Below are positions 45,040-64,000 of a stretch of DNA of 64,000 nt, one piece after another. A program made the translations under genes and the position numbers. The notes beneath the pieces are model-generated. The model worked only from the letters and a program-made list of their open reading frames with translations. It was not told the DNA's origin and did not search any database. How positions within the stretch are numbered: position 1 is the first letter of the stretch; each line of letters begins with the position of its first letter. Source of the DNA: Macrostomum lignano (taxonomy: Eukaryota); contig NIVC01001938.1 of the NCBI GenBank assembly GCA_002269645.1, forward strand, positions 62,001 to 126,000. Direction: 5' to 3'.

Positions 45040-46182
45040 ATGGCTACAAATCCTTCCAACGCGGCGGCGGCAAAGCTGGTCGCAAAGCGTCAAAAAGCCG
45101 AGAAAGCTGCACTGCGCCGCATTCGAAAGTGCATGCAGCCGCGCGAGTGCTTAAAACACGTCGCCGTATTGCTGGACGATCGCATTGCCAATGACCAGCG
45201 GCTTGGCCCGTCGATAACCGGCTGTCTGAACGGGCAACAAGTTGTTCCATTAGACGCCGATGAACAGCGACTGTTGCCTCTGCCCGCTATTCGCTGGAGT
45301 AGAAACGTTCACGCGTTGGACCCGGCCGCGTTTGCCGATCTGGCTCACGACGCTTTGCCATCGTCGCTAGCTGCTGCTTCAGTAGAATTTGAAGAGCTCG
45401 AGTCCGATTCCTTGCTAATAATGGACGGTCGCCAATTAGTTGAATTGATTCAGCAGAAGCGGCAGAGTGGATTGAGCACATTAGTGTTTCCCGAGCAGCT
45501 TGTCAGCACTAATCGCTGGTCGCCCAGTCTTGTCGTTTATGATCTGGAGCTTCACATAACCCAATCCAGCCGAGCCGCTGAAGGCAACGCTCTGCGTGCA
45601 AAGATGCTGGCCAATTCCGATAAGCCAGCAGCGCCGCCAGCTAAGAAGCCCAAAGCTAGCACAGCTGATCAGGTCACTCGACTCCAGTGCGAGGAAGCGT
45701 TCGTCTCGCTGCAGCTGACTCGCGGTGTCACTGTACGCGTGCTAGAGGACCCAGTTCAACTGGGCAAACTGGTCTACTGTCTGACCAAAGCCATTGCCGA
45801 GCGGCCTTTCAAAGCTGCCAGACTTGAATCCGTCTTCTCGTTTCACGTTGGCGCCGGTGTTGGCGCCGGCTGCCGGCTGGAAGAGAGCGCGGACGGAGGC
45901 TCGCCAGCTGGCATTGACGAGCTGTGGCGCTGCCAGCTGCAGTGTTTTCCTTTGGTTACGGCCGAGGTGGCTCGGACAATAATGCGAGCCTACCCGTCGC
46001 CTGGCCACTTGATTCGGGCCTACGCCGGGTGCGCCAGCGCCGAGGAGGCCGTCAAACTTGTGGCCGATCTGCAGGTGTGCAAAGGCACCGGGCCGCTTAG
46101 CACTGCCAGGCGACTGGGACCGGAATTGGGGAAACGTATTTACGCGTTTTACTCGTCTCGCGATCCGAATCAGGTGCTTTAG
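45040..46182 (+). CDS. EME1: Crossover junction endonuclease subunit EME1 (MUS81 partner), single coding exon
   Basis: PRECLKHVAVLLD, EEAFVSLQL, LTKAIAERPFK, FSFH, WRCQLQ, AYPSPGHLIRAY and RRLGPELGKRIY match the recalled human EME1 ERCC4/HhH region. Confidence 0.92.
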   Translation: MATNPSNAAAAKLVAKRQKAEKAALRRIRKCMQPRECLKHVAVLLDDRIANDQRLGPSITGCLNGQQVVPLDADEQRLLPLPAIRWSRNVHALDPAAFADLAHDALPSSLAAASVEFEELESDSLLIMDGRQLVELIQQKRQSGLSTLVFPEQLVSTNRWSPSLVVYDLELHITQSSRAAEGNALRAKMLANSDKPAAPPAKKPKASTADQVTRLQCEEAFVSLQLTRGVTVRVLEDPVQLGKLVYCLTKAIAERPFKAARLESVFSFHVGAGVGAGCRLEESADGGSPAGIDELWRCQLQCFPLVTAEVARTIMRAYPSPGHLIRAYAGCASAEEAVKLVADLQVCKGTGPLSTARRLGPELGKRIYAFYSSRDPNQVL

Positions 46183-46516: not shown

Positions 46517-47793
46517 TTAAAAGTTCAGGTTGCAATTTATAATAGGTAAAATTGAAGAAATTTTCAAAGCACTAGAAGTTAGCATGTTATGCGTGTAGCT
46601 CAAATGCATAAACCTGTGGACCGTGTAGGAACCATTCGGAATCTGTTTAGTCTCGAAATTTGTGCGGTTCAGTCGCCTGCAATGGTCCTGTTTCGGCTTA
46701 GACAGCTTTTCTGGTGCTAGACAGAGCTTCTTTAGTCTGTCAGGAATCCATGCCACGTCCCAGATGGGCTGGAAGGCGTCTGCCTCGGCCAGCATGTTGC
46801 CGCACCAGTCGGCAGGTCGGTCGCTCTTCTTCAGAGCCGTGTACTTCTCGTAGAATGTGTGCAGCATTCTGGGTCCCGTGACGTGCACCGCATCGTTATG
46901 AACTCTCTTGGTGTTACTGGCCCAATTCTGCTCGAACCATTGCGGCCAGTTTGTTAGCACGAAGCTCAGGAAGCTGTGATTCGCTCGGCTCATCATCACC
47001 GCATTCGAAATCAGTGCCGGAAGATTGAACGTGAAGACTGCGTGCTCAGTAGGCTCCTGACTCCACACGGCTGACTCACAGTCGAAGTTCGGAGTCAGCC
47101 CCACTCCCTGAAGCTGCGACGGTCTTAGCAGCGGTGTCGGATCTCGAAGCAGCTCCACATCCGTGTCGATGTACAGACCGCCGACGTGGTGCAGCACGAC
47201 CAGACGGCCGATGTCCGATCGTTCCAGCCCGTTGACCAGCTTGCGGTAGCTTTGAACAAGGTACGGATAGTGCTTCGAGATGAGCTCGGAGATCTGCTTG
47301 TCGTCCCAGTGCATGAAGTGCCAGGCCTGGATTCGGCTACCGTTACTCAGCCGTGCCCAGGAGCGCACAATGGGAACCAGCTTGGCAGGCACTCGGCCGT
47401 CTTTGCTGGTCCAGTGCACCAGCGCCGGGATGGAGTCCGGGAACTGGGAGGGCAGCTCGCTGCAACTTGAATTCTTTAAGGCTGACGAATCGTTTTGCCA
47501 TTCTGATTGAGTATTTGTAGTTGGCCTTTTATTTAGATAGATTATCAGCTGTATCGCAATCGTCAGTATTATTAGAAGCGTCAGTTTTCGTCTATTCGCT
47601 AAAAATATATAGATGGTAATCACAGGTATAGTTGCAGTTAAGGGCGTTGCCAGAGAGAGGGGTCTATACGGTCAATTGAAGGCTTGTTCTAGCCACCTTT
47701 TACTGCAGCCTTCTTTAACAATACTTCTCGACCTATTACATGTATAACCCGACTATTCCACTAATCACAGACACAGCTATACTAACTTGCCAT
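46517..47793 (-). CDS. GT32-family (DXD sugar-binding) glycosyltransferase with N-terminal signal anchor. Main exon 47598-46517; putative micro-exon 47793-47787
   Basis: IPALVHWT, ERSDIGRL and GGLYIDTDV (DXD) motifs; hydrophobic LTLLIILTIAIQLIIYL. The listed ORF starts at GTG. An ATG GCA A|gttagt micro-exon with a ttttag acceptor at 47600-47599 gives MATNRRK in frame (inference). Confidence 0.82.
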
Positions 47794-48527
47794 GGAACTT
47801 CAGTATTTCTTGATTCTGTACCCAGCGCTAGAGTCGATTGCGGCGGCTTTCGAGTATCGATAGATCAAATTAACAGATGTTTGTCTTTCGGTACGTAGCA
47901 CTGTTGTTGGCTAGTCAGTCAGACTAAATAAAATTCACTTATGTCCAAAAAATTGTTAAAAGGTATATTTATGCCCACTTGATCCAAACGAGTACATACT
48001 TACATGGGGTACAATATCGCTTTAGTCCATTGGCCATCACAATTTTCTCAATCGAGTTTTTATTAGGTAATCCTGATTTTTTCCGCTTTCAATTGCCTTA
48101 ATTTTACGTCGGCAGCTATACTGTATTGTTTAGATAGACGAAACATGTTGAAAAAATTTAGTTGACTTTATTTAAAGCTTTCTGTCAATTCACCCCTTGT
48201 ATGCGCATTTGGACTCCACCCCTGTGCACTGCACTGCCTTTCTGCCTAGGACATTTTTATTCGGCCAATGAATGAAGCGAGTGTAATAGTGCCTGTTTAT
48301 CCAGCTGCTATCCATTCACGACTGAGTATGGACTGTACTAGCTAAATTGCGTTGAACCTGAACGCTGAATCTGCGACTTCTTTTTCTCCATGCTGATTTA
48401 AACCAAAAAGCCAAACCAGGAAGGATAAATTCAACTAGATGAACTGTAATAGGGGGGGGGGGGTCATACAAGCTCGAAATTTCGCCTTGTCGAAAACTCT
48501 TGTTAGCTCTTCCAGTCACCCGCTAGC

Positions 48528-48825
48528 TCAGTCATTCTGTCTATTAGGCATCAGCGAGTGCAAACCTTCGCGAAAATGTCAACCCCTACTAATTGCAGTG
48601 TTTTTTCGGTGTTGCACGTACGTCTGTTCCATTAAATATGTAAATATGTACTAAACATATTTACAAGGCTAGCTCAAAACTAAGCATTAAACAGGCTAGA
48701 TCAGTCATTCTGTCTATTAGGCATCAGCGAATGCAAACCTTCGCGAAAATGTCAACCCCTACTAATTGCAGCGTTTTTTCGGTGTTGCACGTACGTCTGT
48801 TCCATTAAATATGTAAATATGTACT
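48528..48825. repeat. 125-bp direct duplication
   Basis: 48528-48652 and 48701-48825 are near-identical (tcagtcattctgtctattaggc...aaatatgtact). Confidence 0.9.
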
Positions 48826-49919
48826 TTTAAATTGCATCGTCAATTATTGAATCAAAGAAAAAATCGGAAACAATCATCGCATTCTTGCTGACAGAGCAAA
48901 GGTTTCTGATCAGGCAGTTAAAGCGGAAGCTTTCAATGTAATGCATGGCACATGCTCGACGCATTCTAATCTTCGATGAGCTGATAGGGAAAACAACTCA
49001 CAGCTGTGTTGTTTCGTCATAAGCAATAAGCAAGCTATGAAAATATCTTTTCTTAGCCCAGTGGAATCTCTCGTATTAGGCACTTAAAGATTGAATGATT
49101 CCTAGATGATCACAAAAGCGGAAATGATATCTGCACTCGCACTCAGATGTTAATCAATTCGTTCGAAATGTAAACTGCAAGTTTAGATGTCTACTTCTAG
49201 GTTTGCCGGTCCCTCAGTTGAGCTTCTCGGTGAGAAATTTGCGTGCTGTCCATGTTCAACCTTACTTAATACTGTGTACACTCCTTATTGTAAGGCTTCT
49301 CCCTGTGACATATTTGCCACGAACGCACGCCCACTCTCTATATTGAAATTGCAGTAATGGGTTAAATGGAGCAAACGCGTCAGTAACTTGATAGTCTATG
49401 GCTGTCTTCCATGCATTTAAATGGGGCAAAGTCTTCTGTAAAACGAGCGAGGTTTGAGATTGCGAGAAAACCGACTTGGCGCTCAGGCCTGACAATCGAT
49501 ATATTTTATAAGCCGAAGATTGAGGTGGGGTTTGGGTGTTGCACACGCACGGGCGCAACCGCACGTTGCAAACAACCACCCCCCCATACACAAGCACGTA
49601 CAAATATGACTACGAACAACATTAGAATATATATAGGTGCATAGAATGCTCACACTTCAGTAGAGCTTTTAAATGGGGCAGAGTCGTCAGTTAGATGGTT
49701 TTGAAAAGAATCACTACTGCTACTACTATTAGTATAATCGATGAATTGATTGATTGACTGCTTTACCTTTCAAAATATAAGTATTTACCTAAAATACTAA
49801 GTGTGGATTTAATTTTATTGAGCGGCGGCAGCAGCGATGGAGTCGAACTGGACAGAAGCCTGTACATATGATTTGCCAGTTATTAATTGGATCACCGCAT
49901 TGTGTGCTGTCGTAACAGA

Positions 49920-51177
49920 ATGTCTCCTTGGCAAGACGAGTTTACTGACAGCGACGACGAGCGCATCGCAGCTGCATTAGATGAGTACGAGCGAGAAAGA
50001 GCCGCTGCAGCCCAGAATACTGCAGGCCCCGTGTCTTCTGTCCGCAAGCGAGAAGTTTCCGCCGATGATATCCCACCTGCTGGTCAGCCGGCACAGAAAA
50101 GGGGGCGGAACGCCACGACGGACGACGATGAAGCCGACGAGTTCAGTGTGCTGGCGTTTAGTAGTGGAGCACCGCGGCAGCCACCACAGCCGACACTGCC
50201 GTCACAGTCAACTATGCAGCAACAGTCATCCGCCTCCTACGAGCTTGATGAGATGGACTCGGACGACCGGGCGGCCCTCAACGCCATGCTCGACTACGAG
50301 GCGTCCATGAGCCCTGCCGTGCCGCAGCAAAAACCGCCGCCGGAACCTGCTGCAGCTGTCGCCAACCCTGCCGAGCTCTCAACGCTGCCGAAACCGCCAG
50401 AAGTAGCCGCCGAGCTGCATCGTCAACAGCAGCAGCAACAGCAGCAACAGCAACAGCAGACTGAATGGCAGCGAACGCAGCAGCGGGAGCCGTACTCGCA
50501 AGCAATCTCACGTTGGTCAATGCAGACCATGCCTCTGGCGAGCCAACGACGGAGCTGGAACCGGCCTGAAGCTCGAGCCGCCGAGGAGCTTCGACCGGAC
50601 GAACTGTCCTCGTTAAGCTACAGCCCGTCGTCATCTGCTGCACAGTTAATCCGAATGCTACAGCGCTCGGAGTCTGGCAGTACCATCAGCAGCAGCAGCA
50701 GCAGCAGCAGCTCCAGCTCCCAACGCGGCAGAGGCGCAGCGGCAAACGGTCGACGCAGAGGCGTCGGCGTCCGGCAAATCGGCCAGAATCCGCTGCTGCA
50801 GGCCGACGCGTTCCGCCAACAGTTCACGGTCACTCGATCAGCTAGCCGTTCGCTACCGCTGTATGGTGCCGCTCCGGTACAGCGGCTGGTTGAGGACACC
50901 GGAGTACTAACTGTGCGGCGCTATCTGCACGTCATCCACATCGATAATTTGCGCTTCATCGGTGAGTAGTAGTAGACTGCTCTTCTCTCTGCTTAACTTT
51001 ATACTTATGCATGCAACGCCACAACAATCCCATGTACAGGCCGTGCAAAGGTGTACTTGGGCGAGGCGCTCGAGCCGCACTGCACTGAGTTGCTATTGGC
51101 GTCCAGTCCGGAACTTAACGTCGGCATGGACGAGTCGTGTGACCGCCGGCTAGTGGAGGACCCGCTGGCTGTCGACG

Positions 51178-51208
<31 letters not shown>

Positions 51209-52192
51209 TCGCACCTTGTCGGGCTACATTCGGCTTGTGACCAACACCGCCGGCTGGCACGTTTACGAGCTGCTGCACAGACTGCTGCCGGGATCCGAGG
51301 TGGGCCGAGGTTTCGTGCTCAACAACCTCACAACGCTGACAGTCTGCGGTGTGCGTTCCCCTGATACGATTGTGCGAAGTCTCACGCAGCACGACGGATA
51401 CTCCTGGTCGGCATTGGCGTATCTCAATGCAGCATGCTGGTGCAGGCAACGCGCTGGGTGCTCTCCTACCCGCGGACGGCCAGCCTGCCAAATAATACCG
51501 ATGGCTTTCTGCTAGCTCACCAGCAGATGCGGGCGGCACTCCTTACGATGTTTAAGGATATCCAGCGCCAGCGTCGTATCCGTCAGGAGCGCCTCCAACG
51601 CTGCTCGGCTTGCTCAGAAGCACTGAAGCAAACAATGCGACACCTGAAGCGCCGTCAGTGCCCGCTCCGGGTGGCCGTGTGCAATGCCCTACTCCGGACA
51701 TCAGGTGTCGTGTACCTTTATGGGCCATCAGGAGTCGGAAAAACCACGGCCGTTGAGCGCCACTGGGGCCCAGAGCGAGTATTCTGCCCAACAATCAAGC
51801 CTTTCGATGGCAACGACTTCATCTTTGATGGGCTCGACATCAACAGGCACTCTGTCATCTTCATTGACGAAATTCGGCCCCAATATTTTGAAGGGAGTAG
51901 TGACCTAGAAGCGACGCTACTGCGGCTGTTGAATGGGAACTCGTTTCTAATCAACACGAAGCATCAATCGCATGTGTACGTCGACTGGGCGCAAAGACTC
52001 ATAGTAGTCCTGGCCGGGCACGCTTCGCCTGAAGAATACAGTCCGGATTTTCAGCGCCGGCTGCGGAACGAGAATAATGTCGCTATAGAAATGGATCACG
52101 ACATTGAAGAATGTCATGGGGAGTGCCAGCCAGTACCTGATGGCGCCTACGCTGCTGCCGCCGACGATGAGCCCGACAATGGCATGTACTGA
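49920..52192 (+). pseudogene. Rep-like protein (degenerate HUH region plus SF3 helicase) with long low-complexity N-terminus. Exons 49920-50961 and 51040-52192; frameshift near 51425-51434
   Basis: Walker A YLYGPSGVGKT (51722-51745), Walker B VIFIDE and Arg-finger-like FQRRL. A 78-nt GT-AG intron (gtgagt...tacag) joins the 49887 and 51051 ORFs in frame. HUH-like positions RRYLHVIH, TLSGYIRL and RSPDTIVRSLTQHD lack the catalytic His and Tyr. Confidence 0.68.
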
Positions 52193-52633
52193 TCTTTTGA
52201 TCGATCGATCGATCGATTGATTAATGTTCTGTTTCTTGACTAATTACTTGGCTAGTACTACTACTATTAGAGACTCTGGCCTAATAACGGTTCTTTGTTT
52301 AATAATCAATTCATTTATTCAGCTAGCCAGCCAGCCAGCTATTCCCCCCTCCCCCAATGTTTTTGTCGCATAGTTTAAAGCCTTCTTAAGCCTATTGTTC
52401 CTGTCTATTGACTATACAGTTTTCCCTTGACTAAAAACTGCAGGTATGAAGATTTCTTACTTTGATAATAATAATAATCCACAGCAATGGACAGCAGCGA
52501 TGAGCAGCGGTAGATTAACAACAACGGCGGCAGAAGAAAAAGGACGCTAAAATTCAAATGGCGTGCCAAAGCAGAAAGCTTAGTCTCAATAATAAAATTG
52601 ATATACCTATCAAGAAGAAAGAAGAAGAAATTA

Positions 52634-53355
52634 CTATAGCATTTTGCAGTCAAGTTTGAACTGCGGGCATTCAAATTAGACAAGAAGGGAAGAGCCAAAT
52701 TTCAGAATCCGTCCCCAAGTCAAGCAGAACTTTATGTCTGTGGCACAAACTGAAACACACTGACGGGCACTCAATTTAGACAACGGGCATTCAAATTAGA
52801 CAAGCAGCGGAAAGTCTATGTGTGCCAGAGAGAAAGACCATGGACAATCCGATTCGTCGCTATGCAAGAATTTCCAGAGAGAAGCGTGGCCTCATTATTG
52901 GGGCATGCCAACGTGGTGACTCTGTGGCTGAAATTGCCAACATGTTGGATGTCAAGAGATCATCAGTGTACAACATCTGGAACAAGTTTGTTCAGGATGG
53001 CCAGCGATACGCGCTACCAAGGGGAGGAGCCAGGCACCGTCGAATGAATCCTGCAATGAAGGACCATCTGGCCGCCTTGTTGAATGCCAACCCTCTGATG
53101 ACACTCGGGCAAATGCGGGAATCGCTTCAAATGCGGGTTCACAGAATGGTTGTCTGACAACAGACGCAACACGATCTTGAATTGCCCAGCCAATGCGCCT
53201 GAGAACTTGTCTAATTTGAATGCCCCTTGTCTAAATTGAGTGCCCACCAGTGTGATTTTGTCTAGGCCATAGATAGCATTTGTGCCAGCAGTGAGATCTG
53301 GTCAAGCGTCTAATTTGAATGCCCGCAGTTCAAACTTGACTGCAAAATGCTATAG
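52634..53355 (+). mobile_element. Internally deleted IS630/Tc1-like transposon retaining the HTH region
   Basis: Perfect 48-bp inverted repeat (ctatagcattttgcagtcaagtttgaactgcgggcattcaaattagac) with inner repeated gggca(t/c)tcaa(a/t)ttagacaa motifs at both ends. ORF 52838-53157 MDNPIRRY...SVAEIANMLDVKRSSVYNIWNKF is a Tc1-type HTH with no DDE domain. Confidence 0.85.
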
Positions 53356-54319
53356 CTAGCTGCTGTTAGGCGGCTTCGTTCAACGACTATAATCTTCCTT
53401 GTCTTTACAGTCCAATACATTAATAGTTTATGGCTTTAACTTTGATTACAACTATAAATAACTGATACATTTACATAATAAATAATAATCTTATATCTAA
53501 AGCTGAGTGGATCGATCGACCGGCCGGGTTTAACGCGTATCTCCTCCTAAACGGCTGGCAACTCAAATGCGGGACTTATATATATCAATGCAGAATTTTC
53601 CTACGCAACAAATAGGCTATTTTAATGTTGAAATTTTCAAAATTAAGTCTGTTAAAAAAGCAGAAAACTGTTTTCTTAACCTTCTTTGGCCACATTGCCT
53701 CTCCAGTGGAGGGGTAGTGGCATAATTGTAAAAACAACTACCCCAACCTCCTCCCGCGGGTCGCTGTGTTTTGGAGGGGTGGGTGACGCGTGTTCTGGGT
53801 TCAATGCTAATAAAACCCCGCGTGTTGGGGGTGCCGTAAAATTTAATGATTCCCCCGGAATAGGGGGGGGGGGGTTGGTTTGGGCTGAGTGTACATAGCA
53901 ATGTACTGTGTAAACAGATAGAAAAGGACTGTGTCGAGATTCAATTGGTTTTATTATCGGCGTCTTTCAAAAGGCTGTGTATTAGCTGGGCAGCTAAATT
54001 CAATGAATAAACTTGCGAGCGGGAAGTTCAAACGCAAACTGTTCCTTGAGTTTTAAGCTTTGAGAGGAGAGAATTTGTATTGCTGGAAAGATCTTGCAAC
54101 GCTGAGTTTGGGGATATAAGTTATTTGTTTTAAATATGAAAACAAAAAGCACAGCATTGAAAAAACGATTTCCATACTTTTAAACTTTCTGCCAAGATTG
54201 TAGTTGGGGGGGAAGGTTGCGTACACAAATTCAAGCCAGCTATCATTTGAGTAATTTTAGTAATGGAGGAGGCGGGTGATAAATTTCAATTGTTTTGATT
54301 ATCGGCGCTTTCAGTCCGT

Positions 54320-55990
54320 CAGATAAGAGAGTAGAGAGAAGAGAGTAGAGAGAAGAGAGTTTTCAAGGAGAAGAGAGGATAGAAAGATGATAGAAAAGAC
54401 AGTAGATATGAGAGCTGAGAGATTAAAGACGAGTCGACGACAGAGGGGAGAGAAGAGTGGAGTAAGGCAAGAATGATGAAGAGGGAAAGTGAAGAGAAGA
54501 GAATGTGGAGGGAAGATAGGGGGGGGGGAAGGAAAAATGAGAGATCAAAGGAGGGAGGAAAGATGGGGAGGAGAGAGGAGGGATAAGAGAGTACAGAGGA
54601 GATAGAAGAGAGAGGAGAGATGAGACAGGAGACGGTAGAGAGGAGAGGGGAAAGATGAGAGATGAAAAAGAAGAGGGTAAGAGAGAAAATAGGAGTATGA
54701 GAAATGAGAGCAGAGAGAAGAGACGAGAGAGAAAAGAGAAGAGAGAGAGGGCAGGGTAGAGGAGAGGCGATAGATAAGCGAGTAGAGATGAGAGATGGAA
54801 GAGAAGAGGAGAGATAAGAGAGAATTGAGAGAAGACAGGAGAGAAGACGGGAGAGAGAGAAGCGAGAAGAGAAGAGAGAGAGGACTCAGGAGAGAGATGA
54901 GAAAAGAAATGAGAGAGCAAAGGGGAAAGATGAGAGAATAGAGATAAGAAAAAAGAGATAAGAGCGCAGAGAGGAGAGATGAGAGATGGGAGGTGATTGA
55001 TAAGAAAGTAAGAGTAGAGATGAGAGAGGAGATGAGAGCAGAGAGAAGAGATTAGATAAAGGAGCAAAGAGGAGAGAGGAGACAGGAGAGAGTCTCAGTC
55101 TGGACCTTGCAGTCAATTTTTGCAAACAGGGAAAACATGCTATGATATTTCAGAGGTTTTATGGAGGATTTTTTAATTTTTTTGACGTATACCCAGACAA
55201 GTAAAAAGCATATTTTATAGACTTCAGTTTCATAGTCTTGAGTGACTGAAATTTGATAGAGATAATATTTTTTTAATTGATGGATTGTAGCTTGAAGGAG
55301 ATGATACACGCTGGATTGCAGTTTAACGGAGATGATTTTGATGATATCTGTTTCATAGAGAGGATGAAATGGCTAAATGAAAGGGAATAGAGAAAAGAGA
55401 AAAGGAAAGAGTGGATAAAATATTAGATGAAAGAGAACATGAAAAGAGAGAATCAAAAGGGACAGATTAGAGAAAAGAAAAAGAGAATAAAGGCGAGAGA
55501 AGAAATGAGGGAATTGAGAGGAGAGAGGAGAGGGGTAAGAGAGGAGAAAGAGGAGACAGGAGGGAGTAGAGCCAAAAGACGAGAGAGAAGAGATAAAAGA
55601 GTAAAGATGAGGGGAGAGAGAGGAGAGAGAAGCGAGAGGATAAGGGAGAGAGGAGAGGGGAGAAAGTAGAAAGATGAGAGAGCAGAGAGGAGATAAAGGA
55701 GAGGAGAGTGAAGAGATAAAAGAGAAGAGAGGAAAAAGTAGAGGAGAAAGTAGTGAGGAGAAAGAAGAGAGTAGATATGAGAGTGCAGAAAGGAGAGATA
55801 AGAGAGTAGAGATGAGAGATAAGAGATGAGATGAGAAATGATTGATAAACGAGCAGATAAGAGCAGAGAGGAGATAGGAGAGATTAGAGATGAGAGAGCA
55901 AAGAGGAGAGAGGGACAGACGAGAGTCTCAATCTGGACAATGGCAGGCAGTCAATTTTTGCAAACAGGTAAAACAACATGATTTTTGGGG
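54320..55990. repeat. Two long homopurine (GA-rich) tracts, each followed by the same ~90-bp tail
   Basis: Tracts ~54320-55090 and ~55380-55925; tail gagagtctca(g/a)tctggac...gcagtcaatttttgcaaacagg at 55088 and 55921. Confidence 0.85.
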
Positions 55991-56373
55991 GGTTAATAGA
56001 GGATTTGGAGAGGATTTGGACGATGGGATTCGTGTCATTGGATTCAGCTGATGGATTTCAGGGAATGAAATTCTGGCGATGGGAGTTCTATCCCCTTACT
56101 CCGCCAACGGAGGAGTTGGCCTCGTATAATATAATAATAACATCGGAAAAACTGATCACGCAATATCAAAAGATGAAAAAAATTATAAACAAGGGCTGGC
56201 TAACTAACGCATGTCCATCGTACAGTTCATATTCATAGTGCGCGCATAATTCCCTAAAATAATAGCTAAATGGATCGAATCCCTGATAATTTATCCCTGA
56301 TCCCTGATAACGTACGTGCGCGCTTTGTACGCTATCGTACTAATAGTAATTAAACACACTGGCGGCGGATCTT

Positions 56374-56674
56374 TTAACTCTGCCGCTGAACCTTGGCGAC
56401 AGGCTGCGAAACAACTCCCAAGCCTCCATCCTGGCCGCCGTCACAACTTGCTGAGTTTTGCCTCCGCCTCCGCCGCTGCTTGCTTCTGCTGCCGCCGCCG
56501 CCGCCGCCGTGCACTGCAGCATCAGCGCGCTGCGTCGGCCGAATCTCGCCGCCGCCGCCGCCGCTGTCTTTGGCACCACCGCTGTCGGCCAGCAATGCCG
56601 ATCGGACAGCCAGCGCCGAGGAAATTGCGGCAGAAGCAGAAGCAGAAGAATTCGCCGACTCAGACGCTGCTGCG

Positions 56675-56706
<32 letters not shown>

Positions 56707-57412
56707 TGGTTTAGTAGGATGGCCGTTGCCAACTGTCTGGCGCGAGCGGATGACGGCACCCATTTGCAGCGCCCTGTGCGCGTTATAGCCGTCGTTTCGG
56801 CATATAACCGCCGGCGAGGTGCCATGGGCGCGGGCAAATGCGTGCAGCTGCGCCGGCTCCATCGCCAGGACGACGCTGCATATTGTGCGGCGCCAGTCAG
56901 TCGCAACATAATGCCGGCCGAGCAGCCTATCGCCTCCAGTGCTGATCATGCGGCTGAATGCGCTCTCGCTGTAGACGAGGCCATAAATATCCAAAAAAAT
57001 TGTGGACACCTCGGGCGGAGGAACAGTGACTCCGCGCGCAACGAGGCTCGGCCGGATGTAGGCGTCGTGCAGGCGCAGCAGGGCGTCGCAGAAGAGGTCG
57101 GGCAGCACCATTGTGGCTGGCTGGCCAGTATGCCCGGCCTTGTGCGGAACTTCGGTCGGCGGCAGCACCAGGTGCGAGTGCCCAACGAGATCTTCTTCAG
57201 TGGCACTGATGCTGGTGTCGCGAAACAGCTGGTCCCGGTCGTCCGCCGCCCTGTGTTGCACTGCACGGTTAAGCAGATGCTGCCGCCGCAGATAAATCCA
57301 CGGCAATAGACTAATCGGCTGTTCCACGCTGCAGAAGAAAACGAACTCCTGCACAATGCGCCGGACAAATACCATGGCGCACAGCTGATTGTCGTCGTCG
57401 CTGCGAGACGAG

Positions 57413-57450
<38 letters not shown>

Positions 57451-59649
57451 GTCTCCAGTTTGCGGCAGCGCCTCCCAACTGTGCTCAAGCAGCATATTAA
57501 AAAACCGGCCGCGCCGGTTAAAAATATTGCACACTTCGCTACGTTTAATATAGCTGGCCATATAGCCCATCTGCCGACCATGGTGGCCCAGCTTATGGAG
57601 CTGCTCCTGGAGTGAGCGTACAGCGGCGAACTCACCTTTGGCTTCGTCGATCAGCGAAGACATGCGCACAACTGCAAACTGCCTAGCAGCGAGTGGGTTG
57701 TCGCTCATCAGCTGCTGCTGAGCTCGCCAGCCGGCCTGCTCGGCATCCCCTCTGTCGTCGGCATCGGCGGCGGCGGCGGCACAAAACAACTCTGATTGGC
57801 GCAGTCCGATCGCGTCGAGCACCTGCTCAAGACAGCGATTGCCGCGCAATGTGAGCCAACCCTCCAGGGAGAGCAGGATGGTAACTATCTCCTGGCACTT
57901 GCGGCCCGCCGTTGAAGGCGCCAGCTTCAACTGATTGGTGACCACCTCCAAGCCAAAGACGCCAGCAATGAGGAAAGGCCGCAGCACTAGGTCGGCCAGA
58001 GTGAGCTGCTTGCGCTGCCACAGCCGCTCCAGTGTTGCCTCAACGGAATCGCGGATCTTTCCCCAGCGGCGTTTGTGGCTTTAGTTGGCGGAGACGCGCA
58101 TCTTAGTTGGCGCCGTCCACCAGAGCACGGACAGTCGGTTCAGCGTGGCCTCAATCGACGGCCGGTCGCCGAGCGACACTTTCCTGGCTGGGTGCTCCTT
58201 GCTGAAGTGGCGAAAGACGGAGGCGGAGCTGGCAGACTGACGCTCGCCATGGCGTCGCCGCTGCTGGCACTGGGCGCTGCCGACGAGGTCTCCTCCTCAA
58301 CATTGTCAGCAGCAGCAGCAGCAGCAGAAGAAGAATGAGGCTTCAGCGCCGCCCGGCGCTGCTTTGGTGGCGTGGCAGGTAGTCTGACGAGCAGTTGTTG
58401 GCCATTGCTGATGTTGGCAGACGAGCTGCTGGGTCGCTCCAGCGCGATATCAGCTGTCTGCAACGACAATGGCGAATGACTGGCCAATGGCGGCACGACT
58501 GTCGGCGCAGCTGCAACAGCAGCAGCAGCAGCAGCAGCAGTAGAACTGTCTGGCTGCAGCATCTGCGGCTCATCGTCAGCTTCCTCCTGCTCCTCAACCG
58601 TCGGGCAAAGCAGCAGGCGGCGGCGGCGATCGTTTGATGAGAAGCAGGCAGCGCGTCCCATTGCATCTGCAGCGACCATCATATCGATGATCGCTGTATT
58701 ATCCTCTTCAAAGATGACATCAGCAGTCTCCGCCGCTACCGATGCCGATGCATCATCGGGGTCCGCTGCCGGAGGTACTGACTGCGCGGCGGAATCGATT
58801 GAACCCTGGCAGCGATGGGCCCGAAGCCGACACCGCGCCTCTCCGCAGACGGGGCAGACGGCGATCACTTCCAATCGATGGCTGGCTTTGGTGCTGCGGC
58901 TGCACTTGATCGCCAACCAAACAATGTTTCTCCGCTGCTTGCCGTCTGCGGCAGACCATTGTGCCTCCGTAGGGCGCATGCGCTCTGGCACATCACTCAG
59001 CTGGAAGCTCTGCAGGACCTCTCTCTCATGGCGATTTATATAGTGGCGCTTCAAGTTCGCACCAGGTACAGTCTCGCCACACACAGGGGGGTCTTTCTCG
59101 AAAGCAACTTACGATCGACCATAGACGTAAGTTGGGTAAGCTACACTTACGGGTTGCTCGAAGGGCTCGCAAGTTAGCTATGCGTAAGATTGATCGCAAC
59201 TTTACGAGTTCGTAACTTTGCGCAAAAGACTGTTTCTCGAAACGTTCGTATGTCTATGGTCTTTCGTAAGGTTGATCTTAACCCTACGACTGCTCGGTAT
59301 CAGTCGTAAGACGCACTTAAGCACTAATCGCATAGTACGTGAAGCTTTAGTCAAGCCAAGTCAAGTTAAACTTTATCGAAGGTGGGTCTTTCTCGAAAGC
59401 AACTTACGATAGACTAAGTAAAGATATTTGCAGATTTATGACCATAGACATGCAACTTTTCGTTTCAGATTCGACTTACGAACAGCGTAAGCCACGCAAA
59501 ATCTAAGTGAGTTTTGAGAAAGCGTCTTACGAGCAAACTTACGCTACACGTAAATTTCTTTCTTACGATCTAACTTACCATAGAACTTATGTGAGTTTCG
59601 ATAAACACCCCCCTGGGCATTCCGAATTTCGGCGGCATTTCGAAGCCAT
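56374..59649 (-). pseudogene. Zinc-finger plus divergent tyrosine-recombinase-like gene, disrupted by a MITE, a frameshift and an in-frame TAA (58081-58083)
   Basis: Reconstructed N-terminus MASKCRRNSEC|PVCGETVPGANLKRHYINRH (C2H2-like) and a second CPVC...HRC motif. The C-terminal ORF has LAPSTA (core-binding-like), HKAGHTGQPATMVL, YIRP, FLDIYG, ATDWRRT (HxxR-equivalent) and ARAHGTSPAVICRNDGY (GTS...Y). The first catalytic Arg position reads EQP. Confidence 0.62.
59087..59612. mobile_element. PIF/Harbinger-like MITE inserted in the zinc-finger codons
   Basis: Imperfect TIRs gggggtctttctcgaaa / tttcgataaacaccccc; 3-bp flanks cag (59084-59086) and ctg (59613-59615). Internal second copy of the left end near 59384. 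Excision restores the reading frame. Confidence 0.75.
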
Positions 59650-62606: not shown

Positions 62607-64000
62607 TTACTCGAAAATAAACTGCACAACATTCGTTTCGCCGTTTGCCAAAATCTTCATCCGCTTAGTGGGGGCTGCTACAAGTGTGGTGGTCGATTCT
62701 TCAACAACCAGTGACTTCTTGACAGTTGACATTGACGCTGATCCGCACGGGTCGGTAGTCGCAACAGCCCTTGTAGGAGCGTCGCTCAGGGCGCACGGGT
62801 CGGTAGTTGTAACAGCCCTTGCAGGAGCTTCGCTCAATGTAGAACTTGGTGCCGGCATAGTTCCAGCTAGAGCGACTGTCAGCTGATCACTCATCCCTGC
62901 CATGATCGAGTCCCTCTTCTTGCCTCTCCGGATGTATCGTTCTACCGACGCGCTATTCTGTGAATAGAGGTGGTGTTTAATAAATTCCTTGTCCATGTGT
63001 CAATAAACTTACTAAGAATAAAGAATTGCTCACCTTGTGACCTGTCACCTTCGCAATTTTTTCGACAGAAAAGCCAGCTTCATGCAGCTCCGTAACAACT
63101 GTAGGTCGCACACAATGCGGAGTGTACAGCTTGGACAGGTTAGCATTCGAAGAGATCTTCTTGAGCAACGGCCCCAAAGTGTTGATTCCAACTGGTACTT
63201 TGGTGTACCAGATGCCATCCGCATTCACTCGTGGTTTCGGACGCAGAAAGAAGTCCTCCTGATTCCAACCCGGCACGGCAGTAATTTTCGACAAATAAAG
63301 CTGGAAGGCCTGAACTGGACAGTGCCTTGACTCCGGCTTGGCCACCATCAAGGCCTGTTTATTGTCGTCGCAGAGTCGCATGTCACTCAAGCCTTTTACA
63401 TTCTTTGAGGTGCTGCCTTGCAACTCGATCGCCATAGCTCCGTTTGATAGGGCCTTCTCTCGGAATGAACGAACAGTGAGACCTCGTAGCCATTCTCTGC
63501 CGCGATTGCCGAAATAAAATAACACATTGAAATATACCTCTTCTTGCAAACGTGTTGGAGTGCTTCTGTCGAAGTAAGAAGCAAGCTTGACAAGGTCGTC
63601 CGACTCAATGGCTTCGTAATGCTGCACTCGACCACCGGACTTCAAATACGCATTGCAAACATTCTTCACCATCAAATTCGCGCTATGAAAAGCCTCGTGA
63701 GCGATGATATTGAGGCCACGTAATTTCATAAAGTACCTGAACAGTGCGGCTCGAATTCCTACGATTGTATTCGGCGAATAGAAGCTGCCGTCTGACTTAC
63801 GCAGAGTCGCATAGAAGTAGCGGACCCATTTGGCAATTTATTCCACCGAAGCAGTCGCGTAATCCACTTTTACATTATTCTCCGCCAACCAGGCCGTCAA
63901 GCGGTTGATCACAGCTTTCTCCTTAGAGACAGTCGAATGACATTCGTTGTCTCGTTCCAGTTGAGCGGCCAGACTTTCCAATTCGTCAAGGTTACACAAG
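62607..64000 (-). mobile_element. Crypton-type (DUF3504-like) tyrosine recombinase gene, 5' end outside the window; intron 63033-62958; one premature TAA at 63840-63838
   Basis: Catalytic set R (FGNRGRE), K (SKN), HxxR (TPHCVR), H (TGHK) and Y (SVERY, after splicing a 76-nt gtgagc...cag intron). CPVQAFQLYLSK and VGINTL are Crypton-like. Upstream in-frame YFYATLRKSDGSFYSPNTI. Confidence 0.9.

What the first reader, a model, noticed from the sequence alone, without database searches (positions are those of the whole stretch)
49920..52192. Spliced CRESS/parvovirus-like Rep with intact helicase Walker motifs but dead HUH nuclease
Seen: SF3-type Walker A (GPSGVGKT), Walker B (IFIDE) and an FQRRL Arg-finger-like motif; motif C reads VVLAGH rather than xxTSN. 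Upstream, segments sit where RCR motifs I, II and III would be (RRYLHVIH; TLSGYIRL versus HLQGY; RSLTQHD versus YxxK), but the metal-binding His and catalytic Tyr are absent. The gene has a canonical 78-nt intron and a ~340-aa poly-Q/poly-S disordered N-terminus resembling host exons, plus one frameshift. Inference: an ssDNA-virus-type replication protein resident in an animal genome long enough to gain host features, either repurposed as a pure helicase or decaying.
Basis: partly seen in the sequence, partly recalled or inferred. Interest (0 to 1): 0.75.

Follow-up and report, generated by a model that had tools for sequence, protein, structure and literature searches.

The report
Nuclease-dead viral Rep gene in flatworm
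A flatworm (Macrostomum lignano) chromosome carries a gene that comes from the replication protein of a small circular ssDNA virus; it has kept the motor (helicase) half, lost the DNA-cutting residues, gained an intron and a long disordered head, and belongs to a small conserved family. It is therefore a captured viral gene that was probably kept for a host purpose, not a live virus.

Summary
A + strand gene runs from 49920 to 52192.

The window is M. lignano contig NIVC01001938.1. The gene lies among host genes (COG7, EME1, a glycosyltransferase).

- **Helicase half.** It is SF3-type. The only whole-domain matches are papillomavirus E1 and Rep helicases in PDB (E 7.5e-6), a Pfam-certified CRESS Rep (hhalign 96.9 %) and mostly CRESS Reps by Foldseek.
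- **Splice model.** A natural uninterrupted relative (metagenome contig L007) is colinear with exon 1, exon 2 and the helicase in one frame. This validates the splice model exactly.
- **Upstream domain.** It links to intact Rep nuclease domains only through intermediate sequences. In that alignment none of four family members keeps the HUH pair, and the Tyr column reads S/R/W/D.
- **Family conservation.** The family keeps Walker A/B, the B' Lys, the Arg finger and its own Cys clusters. Two relatives give dN/dS of 0.07.

The best reading is a CRESS-Rep-derived, nuclease-dead host gene family. This copy is either just broken or mis-assembled. The HUH fold, expression and function remain untested.

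The parts
49920..52192 (+). Whole Rep-derived gene, ATG to stop. It has two exons by the splice model. It is broken once (1 frameshift) and has 0 in-frame stops in the exons.
   Evidence: ORF list and sequence. An uninterrupted relative, L007 1531-2865, is colinear in one frame.
49920..50786 (+). Low-complexity N-terminal extension (poly-Q, poly-S, acidic repeats). It is not conserved in relatives.
   Evidence: Translation. Open-frame statistics. Only residues from about 253-290 onward match L007. No Pfam hit.
50787..51395 (+). Degenerate HUH-nuclease-derived domain, with the intron inside it.
   Evidence: 36 % identity to the L007 N-domain. Transitive link to the intact Reps P0016 and P0015 through P0007. 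Alignment register.
50916..50942 (+). Motif I-equivalent strand, RRYLHVIHI.
   Evidence: Aligned with KLFFITVD of P0016 and RRFLHVACI of L007. Predicted as a beta-strand, at low confidence.
50962..51039 (+). 78-nt intron, GTGAGT...ACAG, in phase, with three in-frame stops.
   Evidence: Sequence. GC 0.42 against 0.61 in the exons. The spliced junction ...FIG|RAKVYL matches ...EVGRAKLVL of L007 with no gap.
51213..51236 (+). Motif II-equivalent, TLSGYIRL. Both metal-binding His are absent.
   Evidence: Same register from hhalign, MAFFT and BLASTP. The HUH columns read H-L-H in P0016, H-C-H in P0015, E-I-H in P0007, L-Q-L in L008, T-V-A in L007 and T-L-S in the window.
51375..51395 (+). Motif III-equivalent, RSLTQHD. 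The catalytic Tyr column holds Ser.
   Evidence: The Tyr column reads Y, Y (P0016, P0015) and W, D, R, S (P0007, L008, L007, window). The Thr and Asp of the motif are kept in all six.
51602..51682 (+). Family-specific Cys cluster (CSAC ... CPLRVAVC) in the linker before the ATPase.
   Evidence: The CxxC is present in 6 of 8 family members covering it, and the Cx7C in 9 of 10. Both are absent from the intact Reps P0015 and P0016.
51700..52075 (+). SF3 (AAA+) ATPase/helicase core.
   Evidence: PDB profile search: E1 1tue at E 7.5e-6 over the whole domain, and 9pqj Rep. hhalign against CRESS Rep P0022 gives 96.9 %. Foldseek results.
51722..51745 (+). Walker A, GPSGVGKT.
51857..51871 (+). Walker B, IFIDE.
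51959..51961 (+). Motif B' Lys, the only invariant column of the 12-sequence helicase alignment.
52004..52021 (+). Motif C-equivalent, VVLAGH. The sensor-1 Asn is absent.
   Evidence: Aligned to VVSNE, IIVSN and IISNF of the intact Reps P0015, P0016 and P0022. AGH is shared by the window, P0002, P0003/L007, P0004 and P0006.
52049..52063 (+). Arg-finger segment, FQRRL.
   Evidence: Aligned to the LESRI segment of E1 1tue and to FLRRL of P0022.
52112..52126 (+). C-terminal CxxxC, CHGEC.
   Evidence: Present in 8 of 8 family members that reach the C-terminus.
49714..49732 (.). Upstream copy of a 19-nt direct repeat that brackets the gene.
   Evidence: Its meaning is unresolved.
52252..52270 (.). 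Downstream copy of the 19-nt direct repeat (17/19 identical; 2538 nt start to start).

Best explanation
This is a chromosomal gene of Macrostomum lignano that descends from the Rep (replication-initiator) gene of a CRESS-DNA-type circular ssDNA virus.

It belongs to a small, divergent family. At least one second locus exists in M. lignano. Relatives occur in environmental and SRA assemblies, including brackish microbial mats.

Shown:
- The HUH nuclease lost its metal-binding His pair and its catalytic Tyr before the family diversified.
- The SF3 ATPase core (Walker A/B, B' Lys, Arg finger) and new Cys clusters were kept under purifying selection.
- In M. lignano the gene has host-like base composition, a long disordered N-terminal extension and a canonical 78-nt intron.

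Inferred mechanism:
- The protein can no longer nick an origin, so it cannot start rolling-circle replication.
- What remains is an oligomerising, ATP-binding DNA motor or clamp.
- It would act either as a host DNA/chromatin ATPase or as a decoy that binds origins or subunits of related exogenous Reps.

This particular copy carries one frame break. Everything else is open, so the break is either very recent or an assembly error.
For: **Host context**
- The contig is NIVC01001938.1 of GCA_002269645.1, the Mlig_3_7 assembly.
- The neighbours are COG7, EME1 and a glycosyltransferase.
- GC and GC3 match those neighbours.

**SF3 identity**
- The only whole-domain PDB profile hits are E1 (E 7.5e-6) and a Rep.
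- hhalign gives 96.9 % and E 2e-10 against a Rep that carries Pfam Viral_Rep plus RNA_helicase.
- Most named hits among the first 50 in the viral Foldseek library are CRESS Reps, best E 3e-8. AAV Rep68 tops the PDB hits.

**Family**
- The exhaustive HMMER search found 17 proteins. They include M. lignano A0A1I8FT91 and the intact Reps P0015 and P0016.
- P0016 lies on a 2.3-kb contig, followed by an ORF with an Arg-rich N-terminus.

**Splice model and single break**
- L007 has one uninterrupted frame colinear with all three open stretches of the window.

**Dead nuclease**
-.

**Selection**
- L001 against L007 gives dN 0.158, dS 2.25 and a ratio of 0.07 over 214 codons.
- Cys clusters and AGH are conserved at 25-55 % identity.
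- There are no in-frame stops in about 2.2 kb.
Against: - One frameshift separates the nuclease-like part from the helicase part, so as assembled no full-length protein is encoded.
- No SF3 Pfam model reaches its curated cut-off: RNA_helicase scores 17.5-19.1 bits against 21.5.
- The upstream domain alone has no significant match to any HUH domain.
- Its AlphaFold model is poor and finds nothing.
- The sensor-1 Asn is missing, so ATP hydrolysis may be impaired.
- No expression data could be consulted.
- The hosts of the environmental relatives are unknown. The purifying selection measured there could have acted in a virus or mobile element rather than in a host gene.
- L007 might be cDNA-derived, which would weaken the 'intron gained' reading but not the splice model.
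Confidence: 0.68

Rival explanations
1. This is a decaying endogenous viral element. The copy is a pseudogene with no function, and the loss of the nuclease residues, the sensor-1 Asn and the reading frame are all steps of decay.
For: There is one frameshift. The catalytic His and Tyr are absent. Motif C is altered. A relative, L005, is also interrupted once.
Against: - There is no in-frame stop in 347, 133 and 252 codons. Each is improbable by chance.
- The same 'defects' are shared by members only 25-55 % identical that otherwise keep Walker A/B, the B' Lys, the Arg finger and the Cys clusters.
- dN/dS is 0.07 between two relatives.
- The intron has canonical splice sites and an exact junction.
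Confidence: 0.25
2. The gene belongs to a mobile or episomal element rather than to the host. In this reading a ~2.5-kb unit bounded by the 19-nt direct repeats was inserted here, either as a transposon or as a more-than-unit-length circular DNA.
For: A 19-nt direct repeat brackets the gene, 2538 nt start to start. Its 13-mer core occurs otherwise once in 64 kb, against 0.08 expected. That unit size is typical of small circular ssDNA genomes. Other mobile-element remnants lie nearby.
Against: - The gene occurs once in the window, and the exact protein is seen on one contig only.
- There is no capsid-like or second gene inside the unit.
- The nuclease needed for Rep-mediated mobility is dead.
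- The repeat lies in (TAC)n-like low complexity, so the shuffle control may overstate its rarity.
- The pattern scans of IMG/VR and of the JGI metagenome contigs confirmed no relative.
Confidence: 0.1
3. The gene derives from a parvovirus NS1 rather than a CRESS-type Rep.
For: AAV2 Rep68 and Rep40 are the top Foldseek PDB hits. A few NS1 proteins appear among the viral-library hits. Parvovirus-like insertions are reported in the planarian Schmidtea (PMC3198968).
Against: - The nearest intact relatives, P0015 and P0016, are about 420-440 aa Reps. P0016 is on a 2.3-kb contig with an Arg-rich second ORF.
- The profile match to a Viral_Rep-bearing Rep is 96.9 %.
- Most named hits among the first 50 in the viral library are CRESS Reps.
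- There is no Pfam Parvo_NS1 hit.
Confidence: 0.05
4. It is an ordinary cellular P-loop NTPase with no viral ancestry, and the motif resemblances are convergent.
For: Most Pfam and PDB hits of the single sequence are generic P-loop matches.
Against: Those generic hits cover only the 15-30 residues around Walker A. Every match that spans Walker A to the Arg finger is an SF3 viral helicase. Full Reps with intact nuclease motifs are detectable relatives, and the alignment is colinear beyond the ATPase.
Confidence: 0.02

Closest known systems
Rep of CRESS-DNA viruses (Cressdnaviricota). Solved example: PCV2 Rep helicase, 7lar. Relatives found here: P0016, P0015, P0022.
   Same: The domain order is the same: nuclease-type domain, linker, SF3 ATPase. 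Walker A, Walker B, the B' Lys and the Arg finger are present. hhalign gives 96.9 % to P0022. BLASTP is colinear with P0016 from the motif II/III region to motif C. Viral-library fold hits are mostly CRESS Reps.
   Different: - There is no HUH His pair, no catalytic Tyr and no sensor-1 Asn.
- There are extra Cys clusters and a ~290-aa disordered N-terminal extension.
- The gene has an intron and a chromosomal location among host genes, with no capsid gene.
- It does not reach Pfam cut-offs for Viral_Rep, Gemini_AL1 or RNA_helicase.
SF3 helicase domains of papillomavirus E1 (1tue, 2gxa, 7apd) and AAV2 Rep68/Rep40 (9bc5, 9rm5).
   Same: These are the best solved-structure matches by profile (E 7.5e-6, whole domain) and by fold (E 2e-5).
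   Different: Identity is about 13-20 %. The N-terminal domains differ. These are dsDNA-virus or parvovirus initiators. TM-scores are low (0.3-0.4) because the model is of modest confidence (pLDDT 56).
Rep-like genes of circular ssDNA viruses fixed in eukaryotic genomes (Liu et al. 2011, PMC3198968).
   Same: A virus-derived Rep sequence resident in a eukaryotic chromosome.
   Different: That survey does not list flatworm CRESS-type Reps; it mentions only parvovirus-like elements in Schmidtea. Here the nuclease is inactivated across a whole family while the ATPase is conserved, and the gene has acquired an intron.
Eukaryotic HUH transposons (Helitrons, Replitrons; PMC10288648).
   Same: They are Rep-class HUH proteins encoded in eukaryotic chromosomes. 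P0015 gives a sub-threshold hit to Replitron_HUH (E 0.06).
   Different: From general knowledge, Helitrons carry a Pif1-type helicase, not an SF3 one. Replitrons are reported from plants, algae and protists. Both need an active nuclease. This gene was found once in the window and is nuclease-dead.

Membership tests
SF3 helicase (AAA+ superfamily 3) | Walker A GxxxxGK[ST] and Walker B acidic pair | tested here: met
   GPSGVGKT and IFIDE are present and conserved across the family.
SF3 helicase (AAA+ superfamily 3) | Motif B' basic residue of the DNA-binding hairpin | tested here: met
   The Lys at 51959-51961 is the only invariant column of the 12-sequence alignment. It is aligned to the Lys of the 'IDRKHK' segment of E1.
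SF3 helicase (AAA+ superfamily 3) | Motif C with the sensor-1 Asn | tested here: not met
   VVLAGH is aligned to VVSNE, IIVSN and IISNF of intact Reps. The Asn column holds Gly, or His in another alignment.
SF3 helicase (AAA+ superfamily 3) | Arg finger after motif C | tested here: met
   FQRRL is aligned to the LESRI segment of E1 1tue and to FLRRL of P0022.
SF3 helicase (AAA+ superfamily 3) | Whole-domain profile match to recognised SF3 helicases | tested here: met
   PDB profile search gives E1 at E 7.5e-6 over positions 7-129 of 141. Every other hit listed above the remaining E1 and Rep entries covers only the Walker A region or a short stretch. hhalign gives 96.9 % to a CRESS Rep.
SF3 helicase (AAA+ superfamily 3) | Pfam SF3 model above the curated cut-off | tested here: not met
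   PF00910 scores 17.5-19.1 bits against 21.5. DUF5906 and PPV_E1_C are sub-threshold in relatives.
SF3 helicase (AAA+ superfamily 3) | AAA+ fold resembling SF3 structures | tested here: inconclusive
   The model has pLDDT 56. AAV Rep68/40, E1 and PCV2 Rep are among the top PDB hits, but so are HslU and RuvB. The viral library gives mostly Reps.
HUH (Rep-class) endonuclease | Motif II His-hydrophobic-His metal site | tested here: not met
   These columns read T-L-S in the window. No family member keeps both His: T-V-A, L-Q-L and E-I-H.
HUH (Rep-class) endonuclease | Motif III catalytic Tyr | tested here: not met
   The column reads Ser in the window, and R, W, D in L007, P0007 and L008. It reads Tyr in the intact Reps P0015 and P0016.
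HUH (Rep-class) endonuclease | Sequence homology of the domain to HUH nucleases | tested here: inconclusive
   Direct comparison is not significant: E 2-4 and hhalign 1.5 %. The transitive chain is significant: window-L007 at 1.5e-10, L007-P0007 at 6e-13, and P0007-P0016 nuclease domain at 1e-5.
HUH (Rep-class) endonuclease | HUH fold (beta-sheet with motifs I and II, helix with motif III) | tested here: inconclusive
   The AF2 model has pLDDT 41. Predicted strands lie at the motif I- and II-like segments and a helix at the motif III-like segment, but Foldseek finds nothing.
CRESS-DNA virus (as a virus or provirus) | Capsid gene and circular genome with a stem-loop origin | tested here: not met
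   No second virus-like ORF lies within or next to the unit. No origin was searched for systematically. The flanks hold host genes.
Endogenous viral element | Virus-derived sequence embedded in host chromosomal DNA | tested here: met
   It lies on a 220-kb M. lignano contig with COG7, EME1 and a glycosyltransferase within 16 kb upstream. Viral ancestry is supported.
Co-opted (domesticated) viral gene | Uninterrupted reading frame | tested here: not met
   One frameshift is present in the assembly. Whether it is real needs reads.
Co-opted (domesticated) viral gene | Purifying selection | tested here: inconclusive
   dN/dS is 0.07 between relatives L001 and L007. dS is saturated for every pair that includes the window copy. 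The hosts of the relatives are unknown.
Co-opted (domesticated) viral gene | Expression and syntenic orthologues in related species | not testable with these tools
   No RNA-seq data and no other flatworm genome could be searched here.

The most novel reading that the evidence does not exclude
Macrostomid flatworms (and perhaps other meiofauna) hold an old, selectively maintained host gene family born from a CRESS-virus Rep. The nuclease was switched off at the origin of the family. The SF3 motor was rebuilt, with Gly/His in place of the sensor-1 Asn and new Cys4-6 metal-binding clusters before and after the ATPase. It was then fused to a disordered regulatory head. This would be a cellular DNA motor, or an anti-Rep decoy, of viral origin.
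Probability: 0.35. Interest if true: 0.7.

Novelty: new variant of a known kind. Interest (0 to 1): 0.55.

Why it matters
Rep genes of small ssDNA viruses are known to have been captured by many eukaryotes. Cases where the capture was followed by clear remodelling are few. Here the remodelling is inactivation of the nuclease, retention of the motor under selection, new metal-binding motifs, an intron and a host-type disordered extension.

If the family is expressed in M. lignano, a transgenic regeneration model, it offers a tractable example of how a viral replication initiator becomes a cellular ATPase or an antiviral decoy. It also adds a flatworm branch to the fossil record of CRESS-type viruses.

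Tried and rejected
- **Single-sequence Pfam, PHROGs and PDB searches.** The three open stretches gave only P-loop noise, plus a sub-threshold RNA_helicase hit.
- **Word-indexed search with the spliced upstream domain** (poly-Q masked with X) found nothing.
- **Pattern scans** of JGI metagenome contigs and IMG/VR with the close alignment found no confirmed relative. The broader alignment was too divergent for that tool.
- **AlphaFold of the upstream domain.** With the permitted rows the model was poor and its fold search empty.
- **A second intron instead of a frameshift.** 27 GT..AG candidates of the right phase exist, but none has a good splice context. Homology to L007 changes frame within a few codons, leaving no room for an intron. 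This idea was rejected.
- **Extra copies in the window.** None were found.
- **Similarity of the N-terminal extension** to the capsid-like ORF of the virus contig L006. None was found.
- **Literature.** No prior description of this flatworm family turned up.
- **dN/dS for the window copy** is unusable because dS is saturated.
Full report
**1. What is in the sequence**

On the + strand, an ATG at 49920 opens a frame that runs to a GT at 50962. Three in-frame stops follow. The same frame resumes after an AG at 51039. Further on, the reading continues in another frame down to the stop at 52190-52192.

The 78-nt interval has GTGAGT at its start and ACAG at its end. Its GC is 0.42 against 0.61 for the exons.

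Exon 1 is open for 347 codons. Composition predicts P of about 3e-5, and 0 of 2000 shuffles reach that length. The five other frames carry 6-14 stops each.

Break count for this gene:
- one frameshift;
- no in-frame stop in the exons;
- no detectable insertion or deletion of a domain.

I tested whether a second intron could replace the frameshift. 27 GT..AG candidates of the right phase exist, but none has a convincing splice context. Homology to an intact relative also switches frame within a few codons. So it is a frameshift, not an intron.

**2. Where it comes from**

The last open stretch is found, letter for letter, on NCBI contig NIVC01001938.1 of GCA_002269645.1. NIVC01 is the Mlig_3_7 assembly of the flatworm Macrostomum lignano. 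It was built from PacBio reads with Canu and polished with Pilon using Illumina and RNA-seq data (PMC5730564).

The neighbours are host genes:
- COG7 exons at 34-36 kb;
- an EME1/MUS81-type gene at 45040-46182;
- a glycosyltransferase at 46517-47623 on the minus strand.

GC and GC3 of the Rep-like exons are 0.56-0.61 and 0.62-0.74. Those neighbours give 0.52-0.64 and 0.56-0.70. No second copy exists in the window.

**3. The helicase half**

The single sequence gives only P-loop matches, plus a sub-threshold hit to Pfam RNA_helicase. That hit does, however, cover 88 of the 105 profile positions.

An exhaustive HMMER search with the window protein plus its one close relative found 17 proteins. 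They fall into three groups:
- A close group, P0002-P0011 (24-56 % identity over the helicase domain). It includes UniRef A0A1I8FT91 of M. lignano, i.e. a second locus in the same species.
- A helicase-only group with Ser-rich N-termini (P0012, P0013, P0017-P0020).
- Two complete Reps, P0015 and P0016, with intact nuclease motifs.

P0016 lies on a 2.3-kb contig and is followed by an ORF with an Arg-rich N-terminus. That is the layout of a small CRESS-type virus. I did not print that contig.

A 12-sequence alignment of the ATPase domain was tested in several ways:
- Searched as a profile against PDB, it returns papillomavirus E1 (1tue, E 7.5e-6, positions 7-129 of 141), three further E1 entries and a 'Replication-associated protein' (9pqj) as the whole-domain matches. 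Every other hit listed above them covers only the Walker A region or a short stretch.
- Against P0022, a protein carrying Pfam Viral_Rep plus RNA_helicase, hhalign gives 96.9 % probability and E 2e-10 over 119 columns, from Walker A to the Arg finger.
- The AlphaFold model of this part (pLDDT 56) has AAV2 Rep68 as its best PDB match. E1 and PCV2 Rep also appear, mixed with HslU and RuvB.
- In the viral library, most named hits among its first 50 are CRESS-virus Reps, with best E 3e-8.

Within the SF3 frame:
- Walker A, Walker B, the B' Lys (the only invariant column) and the Arg finger are kept.
- The sensor-1 Asn of motif C is replaced.
- That change is shared as 'AGH' by five family members.

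**4. The splice model and the intact relative**

Contig L007 is 3375 nt and comes from JGI 3300040801. That is a co-assembly from brackish microbial mats of the Etang de Berre (PMC8605020).

L007 carries one uninterrupted frame, 1531-2865. It matches, in order and in a single frame:
- the end of exon 1 (E 7e-4);
- exon 2 (E 1.5e-10);
- the helicase stretch (E 6e-73).

Across the proposed splice junction the alignment has no gap...FIG|RAKVYL in the window against ...EVGRAKLVL in L007. This confirms the 78-nt intron model to the base. It also shows that the natural state of the gene is one continuous frame.

Two cautions apply:
- L007 lacks the intron, but if it is cDNA-derived this says nothing about intron gain.
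- Its upstream 1.5 kb also holds low-complexity ORFs in other frames, so it too looks eukaryotic.

**5. The upstream domain**

Taken alone, the upstream domain has no significant match:
- none in Pfam or PHROGs;
- none in the word-indexed protein search;
- none to the nuclease domain of P0016 (E 2-4);
- hhalign probability of only 1.5 %.

The AlphaFold model is poor (pLDDT 41) and its fold search empty. It does place strands on the motif I- and II-like segments and a helix on the motif III-like segment.

The link to HUH nucleases is transitive:
- Window exon 2 to L007, E 1.5e-10.
- The L007 N-domain to the P0007 N-domain, E 6e-13, including the motif III region.
- The P0007 N-domain to the nuclease domain of the intact Rep P0016, E 1e-5, from motif II through motif III, without any helicase residues in the query.
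- The whole L007 frame gives one colinear BLASTP alignment with P0016, from the motif II/III region to motif C (E 5e-15).

In that register the catalytic columns read as follows:

| Sequence | Metal-site columns | Tyr column | Lys three residues on |
|---|---|---|---|
| P0016 (intact Rep) | H-L-H | Y | K |
| P0015 (intact Rep) | H-C-H | Y | K |
| P0007 | E-I-H | W | S |
| L008 | L-Q-L | D | S |
| L007 | T-V-A | R | Q |
| Window | T-L-S | S | Q |

The Thr and Asp of the motif III segment are kept in all six sequences.

Four different residues occupy the Tyr column, set in a conserved frame. This indicates that the nuclease was lost before the family diversified and that the position has drifted since.

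**6. Is the family maintained?**

- Members that are only 25-55 % identical keep the ATPase motifs.
- They also keep three features absent from the intact Reps: a CxxC (6 of 8 members covering it), a Cx7C just before Walker A (9 of 10), and a C-terminal CxxxC (8 of 8).
- L001 against L007 gives dN 0.158 and dS 2.25, a ratio of 0.07 over 214 codons.
- For pairs that include the window copy, dS is saturated.
- The nuclease-like domain evolves faster than the helicase: 32-36 % against 53 % identity to L007.
- Two relatives are themselves interrupted. L005 has one frame break. L008 has a microsatellite-bearing gap between its two ORFs.

**7. Most likely mechanism**

Shown:
- Rep ancestry of the helicase.
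- Chromosomal host context.
- The exact splice model.
- Absence of the catalytic His and Tyr.
- Conservation of the ATP-binding and DNA-hairpin residues.

Inferred from what is established for Rep proteins:
- The nuclease nicks the origin through the Tyr and a metal held by the His pair.
- The linker drives oligomerisation.
- The SF3 domain forms a ring that translocates on DNA.

On that basis this protein cannot initiate rolling-circle replication. What remains is an oligomerising ATPase with a DNA-binding hairpin. The conserved Cys in the linker and tail suggest a metal-stabilised assembly module. The poly-Q/Ser/acidic head suggests regulated nuclear interactions.

Two uses fit: a host DNA or chromatin motor, or a decoy that titrates origins or subunits of related exogenous Reps. 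I cannot separate them. The loss of the sensor-1 Asn leaves open whether ATP is hydrolysed or only bound.

For this copy, the single frame break with no other damage means either a very recent loss or a residual assembly error.

**8. Comparison and novelty**

The nearest known things are CRESS-DNA virus Reps, and the Rep-like genes already reported in many eukaryotic genomes (PMC3198968). That survey mentions only parvovirus-like elements for a planarian. My literature searches found no description of this flatworm family.

By strict membership:
- It fails two defining features of HUH nucleases (the His pair and the Tyr).
- It fails one feature of SF3 helicases (the sensor-1 Asn).
- It stays below Pfam cut-offs.

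It works like, and descends from, a Rep, but it is not a functional Rep. I rate it a new variant of a known kind.

**9. Unresolved**

A 19-nt direct repeat (17/19 identical) brackets the gene at 49714-49732 and 52252-52270, 2538 nt start to start. Its 13-mer core is otherwise nearly absent from the window: 3 matches against 0.08 expected. A TACTACT stretch lies at a similar distance after the stop in L001 and L007.

The repeat could mark the edges of the original insertion, a 3' UTR element, or chance in (TAC)n-like sequence.

Noticed in passing
window 52634-53355: A Tc1/mariner-type remnant. It has 48-nt perfect terminal inverted repeats (52634-52681 and 53308-53355). They enclose a 111-aa ORF (52822-53157) that keeps only the HTH DNA-binding part (Pfam HTH_29, HTH_SB).
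   Followed up: partly
window 49714-49732 and 52252-52270: A 19-nt direct repeat (17/19 identical) brackets the Rep-like gene, 2538 nt start to start. The 13-mer core is almost unique in the window. It could be an insertion boundary, a UTR element or chance.
   Followed up: partly
window 54300-56000: A purine-rich degenerate satellite with a register of about 14 nt (GC skew 0.68). Similar strongly skewed blocks lie at 10-12 kb and 24-30 kb.
   Followed up: no
window 56374-57987 (-), 58140-59084 (-), 62977-63729 (-): Two long GC-rich ORFs (537 and 314 aa) have Ala/Ser runs and no Pfam hit. Nearby is a DUF3504 plus phage-integrase-like ORF, which points to a Crypton-type tyrosine-recombinase element remnant.
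   Followed up: partly
window 49920-50310 (exon 1): Two copies of an acidic peptide lie about 100 residues apart in the disordered head: ..DSDDERIAAALDEYE.. and ..DSDDRAALNAMLDYE... This may be a short interaction motif.
   Followed up: no
L003 380-1483, L004 242-1417 (Logan SRR21069068): A second lineage of Rep-type SF3 proteins (P0017, P0019, P0020). They have Ser-rich N-termini and no recognisable nuclease motifs. This suggests that nuclease loss with helicase retention happened more than once.
   Followed up: partly
L006 (Logan SRR14381426, 2347 nt): A small contig with an intact Rep (P0016). A same-strand ORF with an Arg-rich N-terminus follows it, which fits a CRESS-type virus. It is the nearest intact relative found; its sequence was not printed.
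   Followed up: partly
L005 and L008: Family members from ENA metagenomes are also interrupted. L005 has one frame break near its 3' end. L008 has a (TG)n/poly-Ser-bearing gap, possibly an intron, between the nuclease-like ORF and the helicase ORF.
   Followed up: partly
window 48522-48825: Two copies of a 131-nt unit, 98 % identical, spaced 173 nt start to start, about 1 kb upstream of the gene.
   Followed up: no
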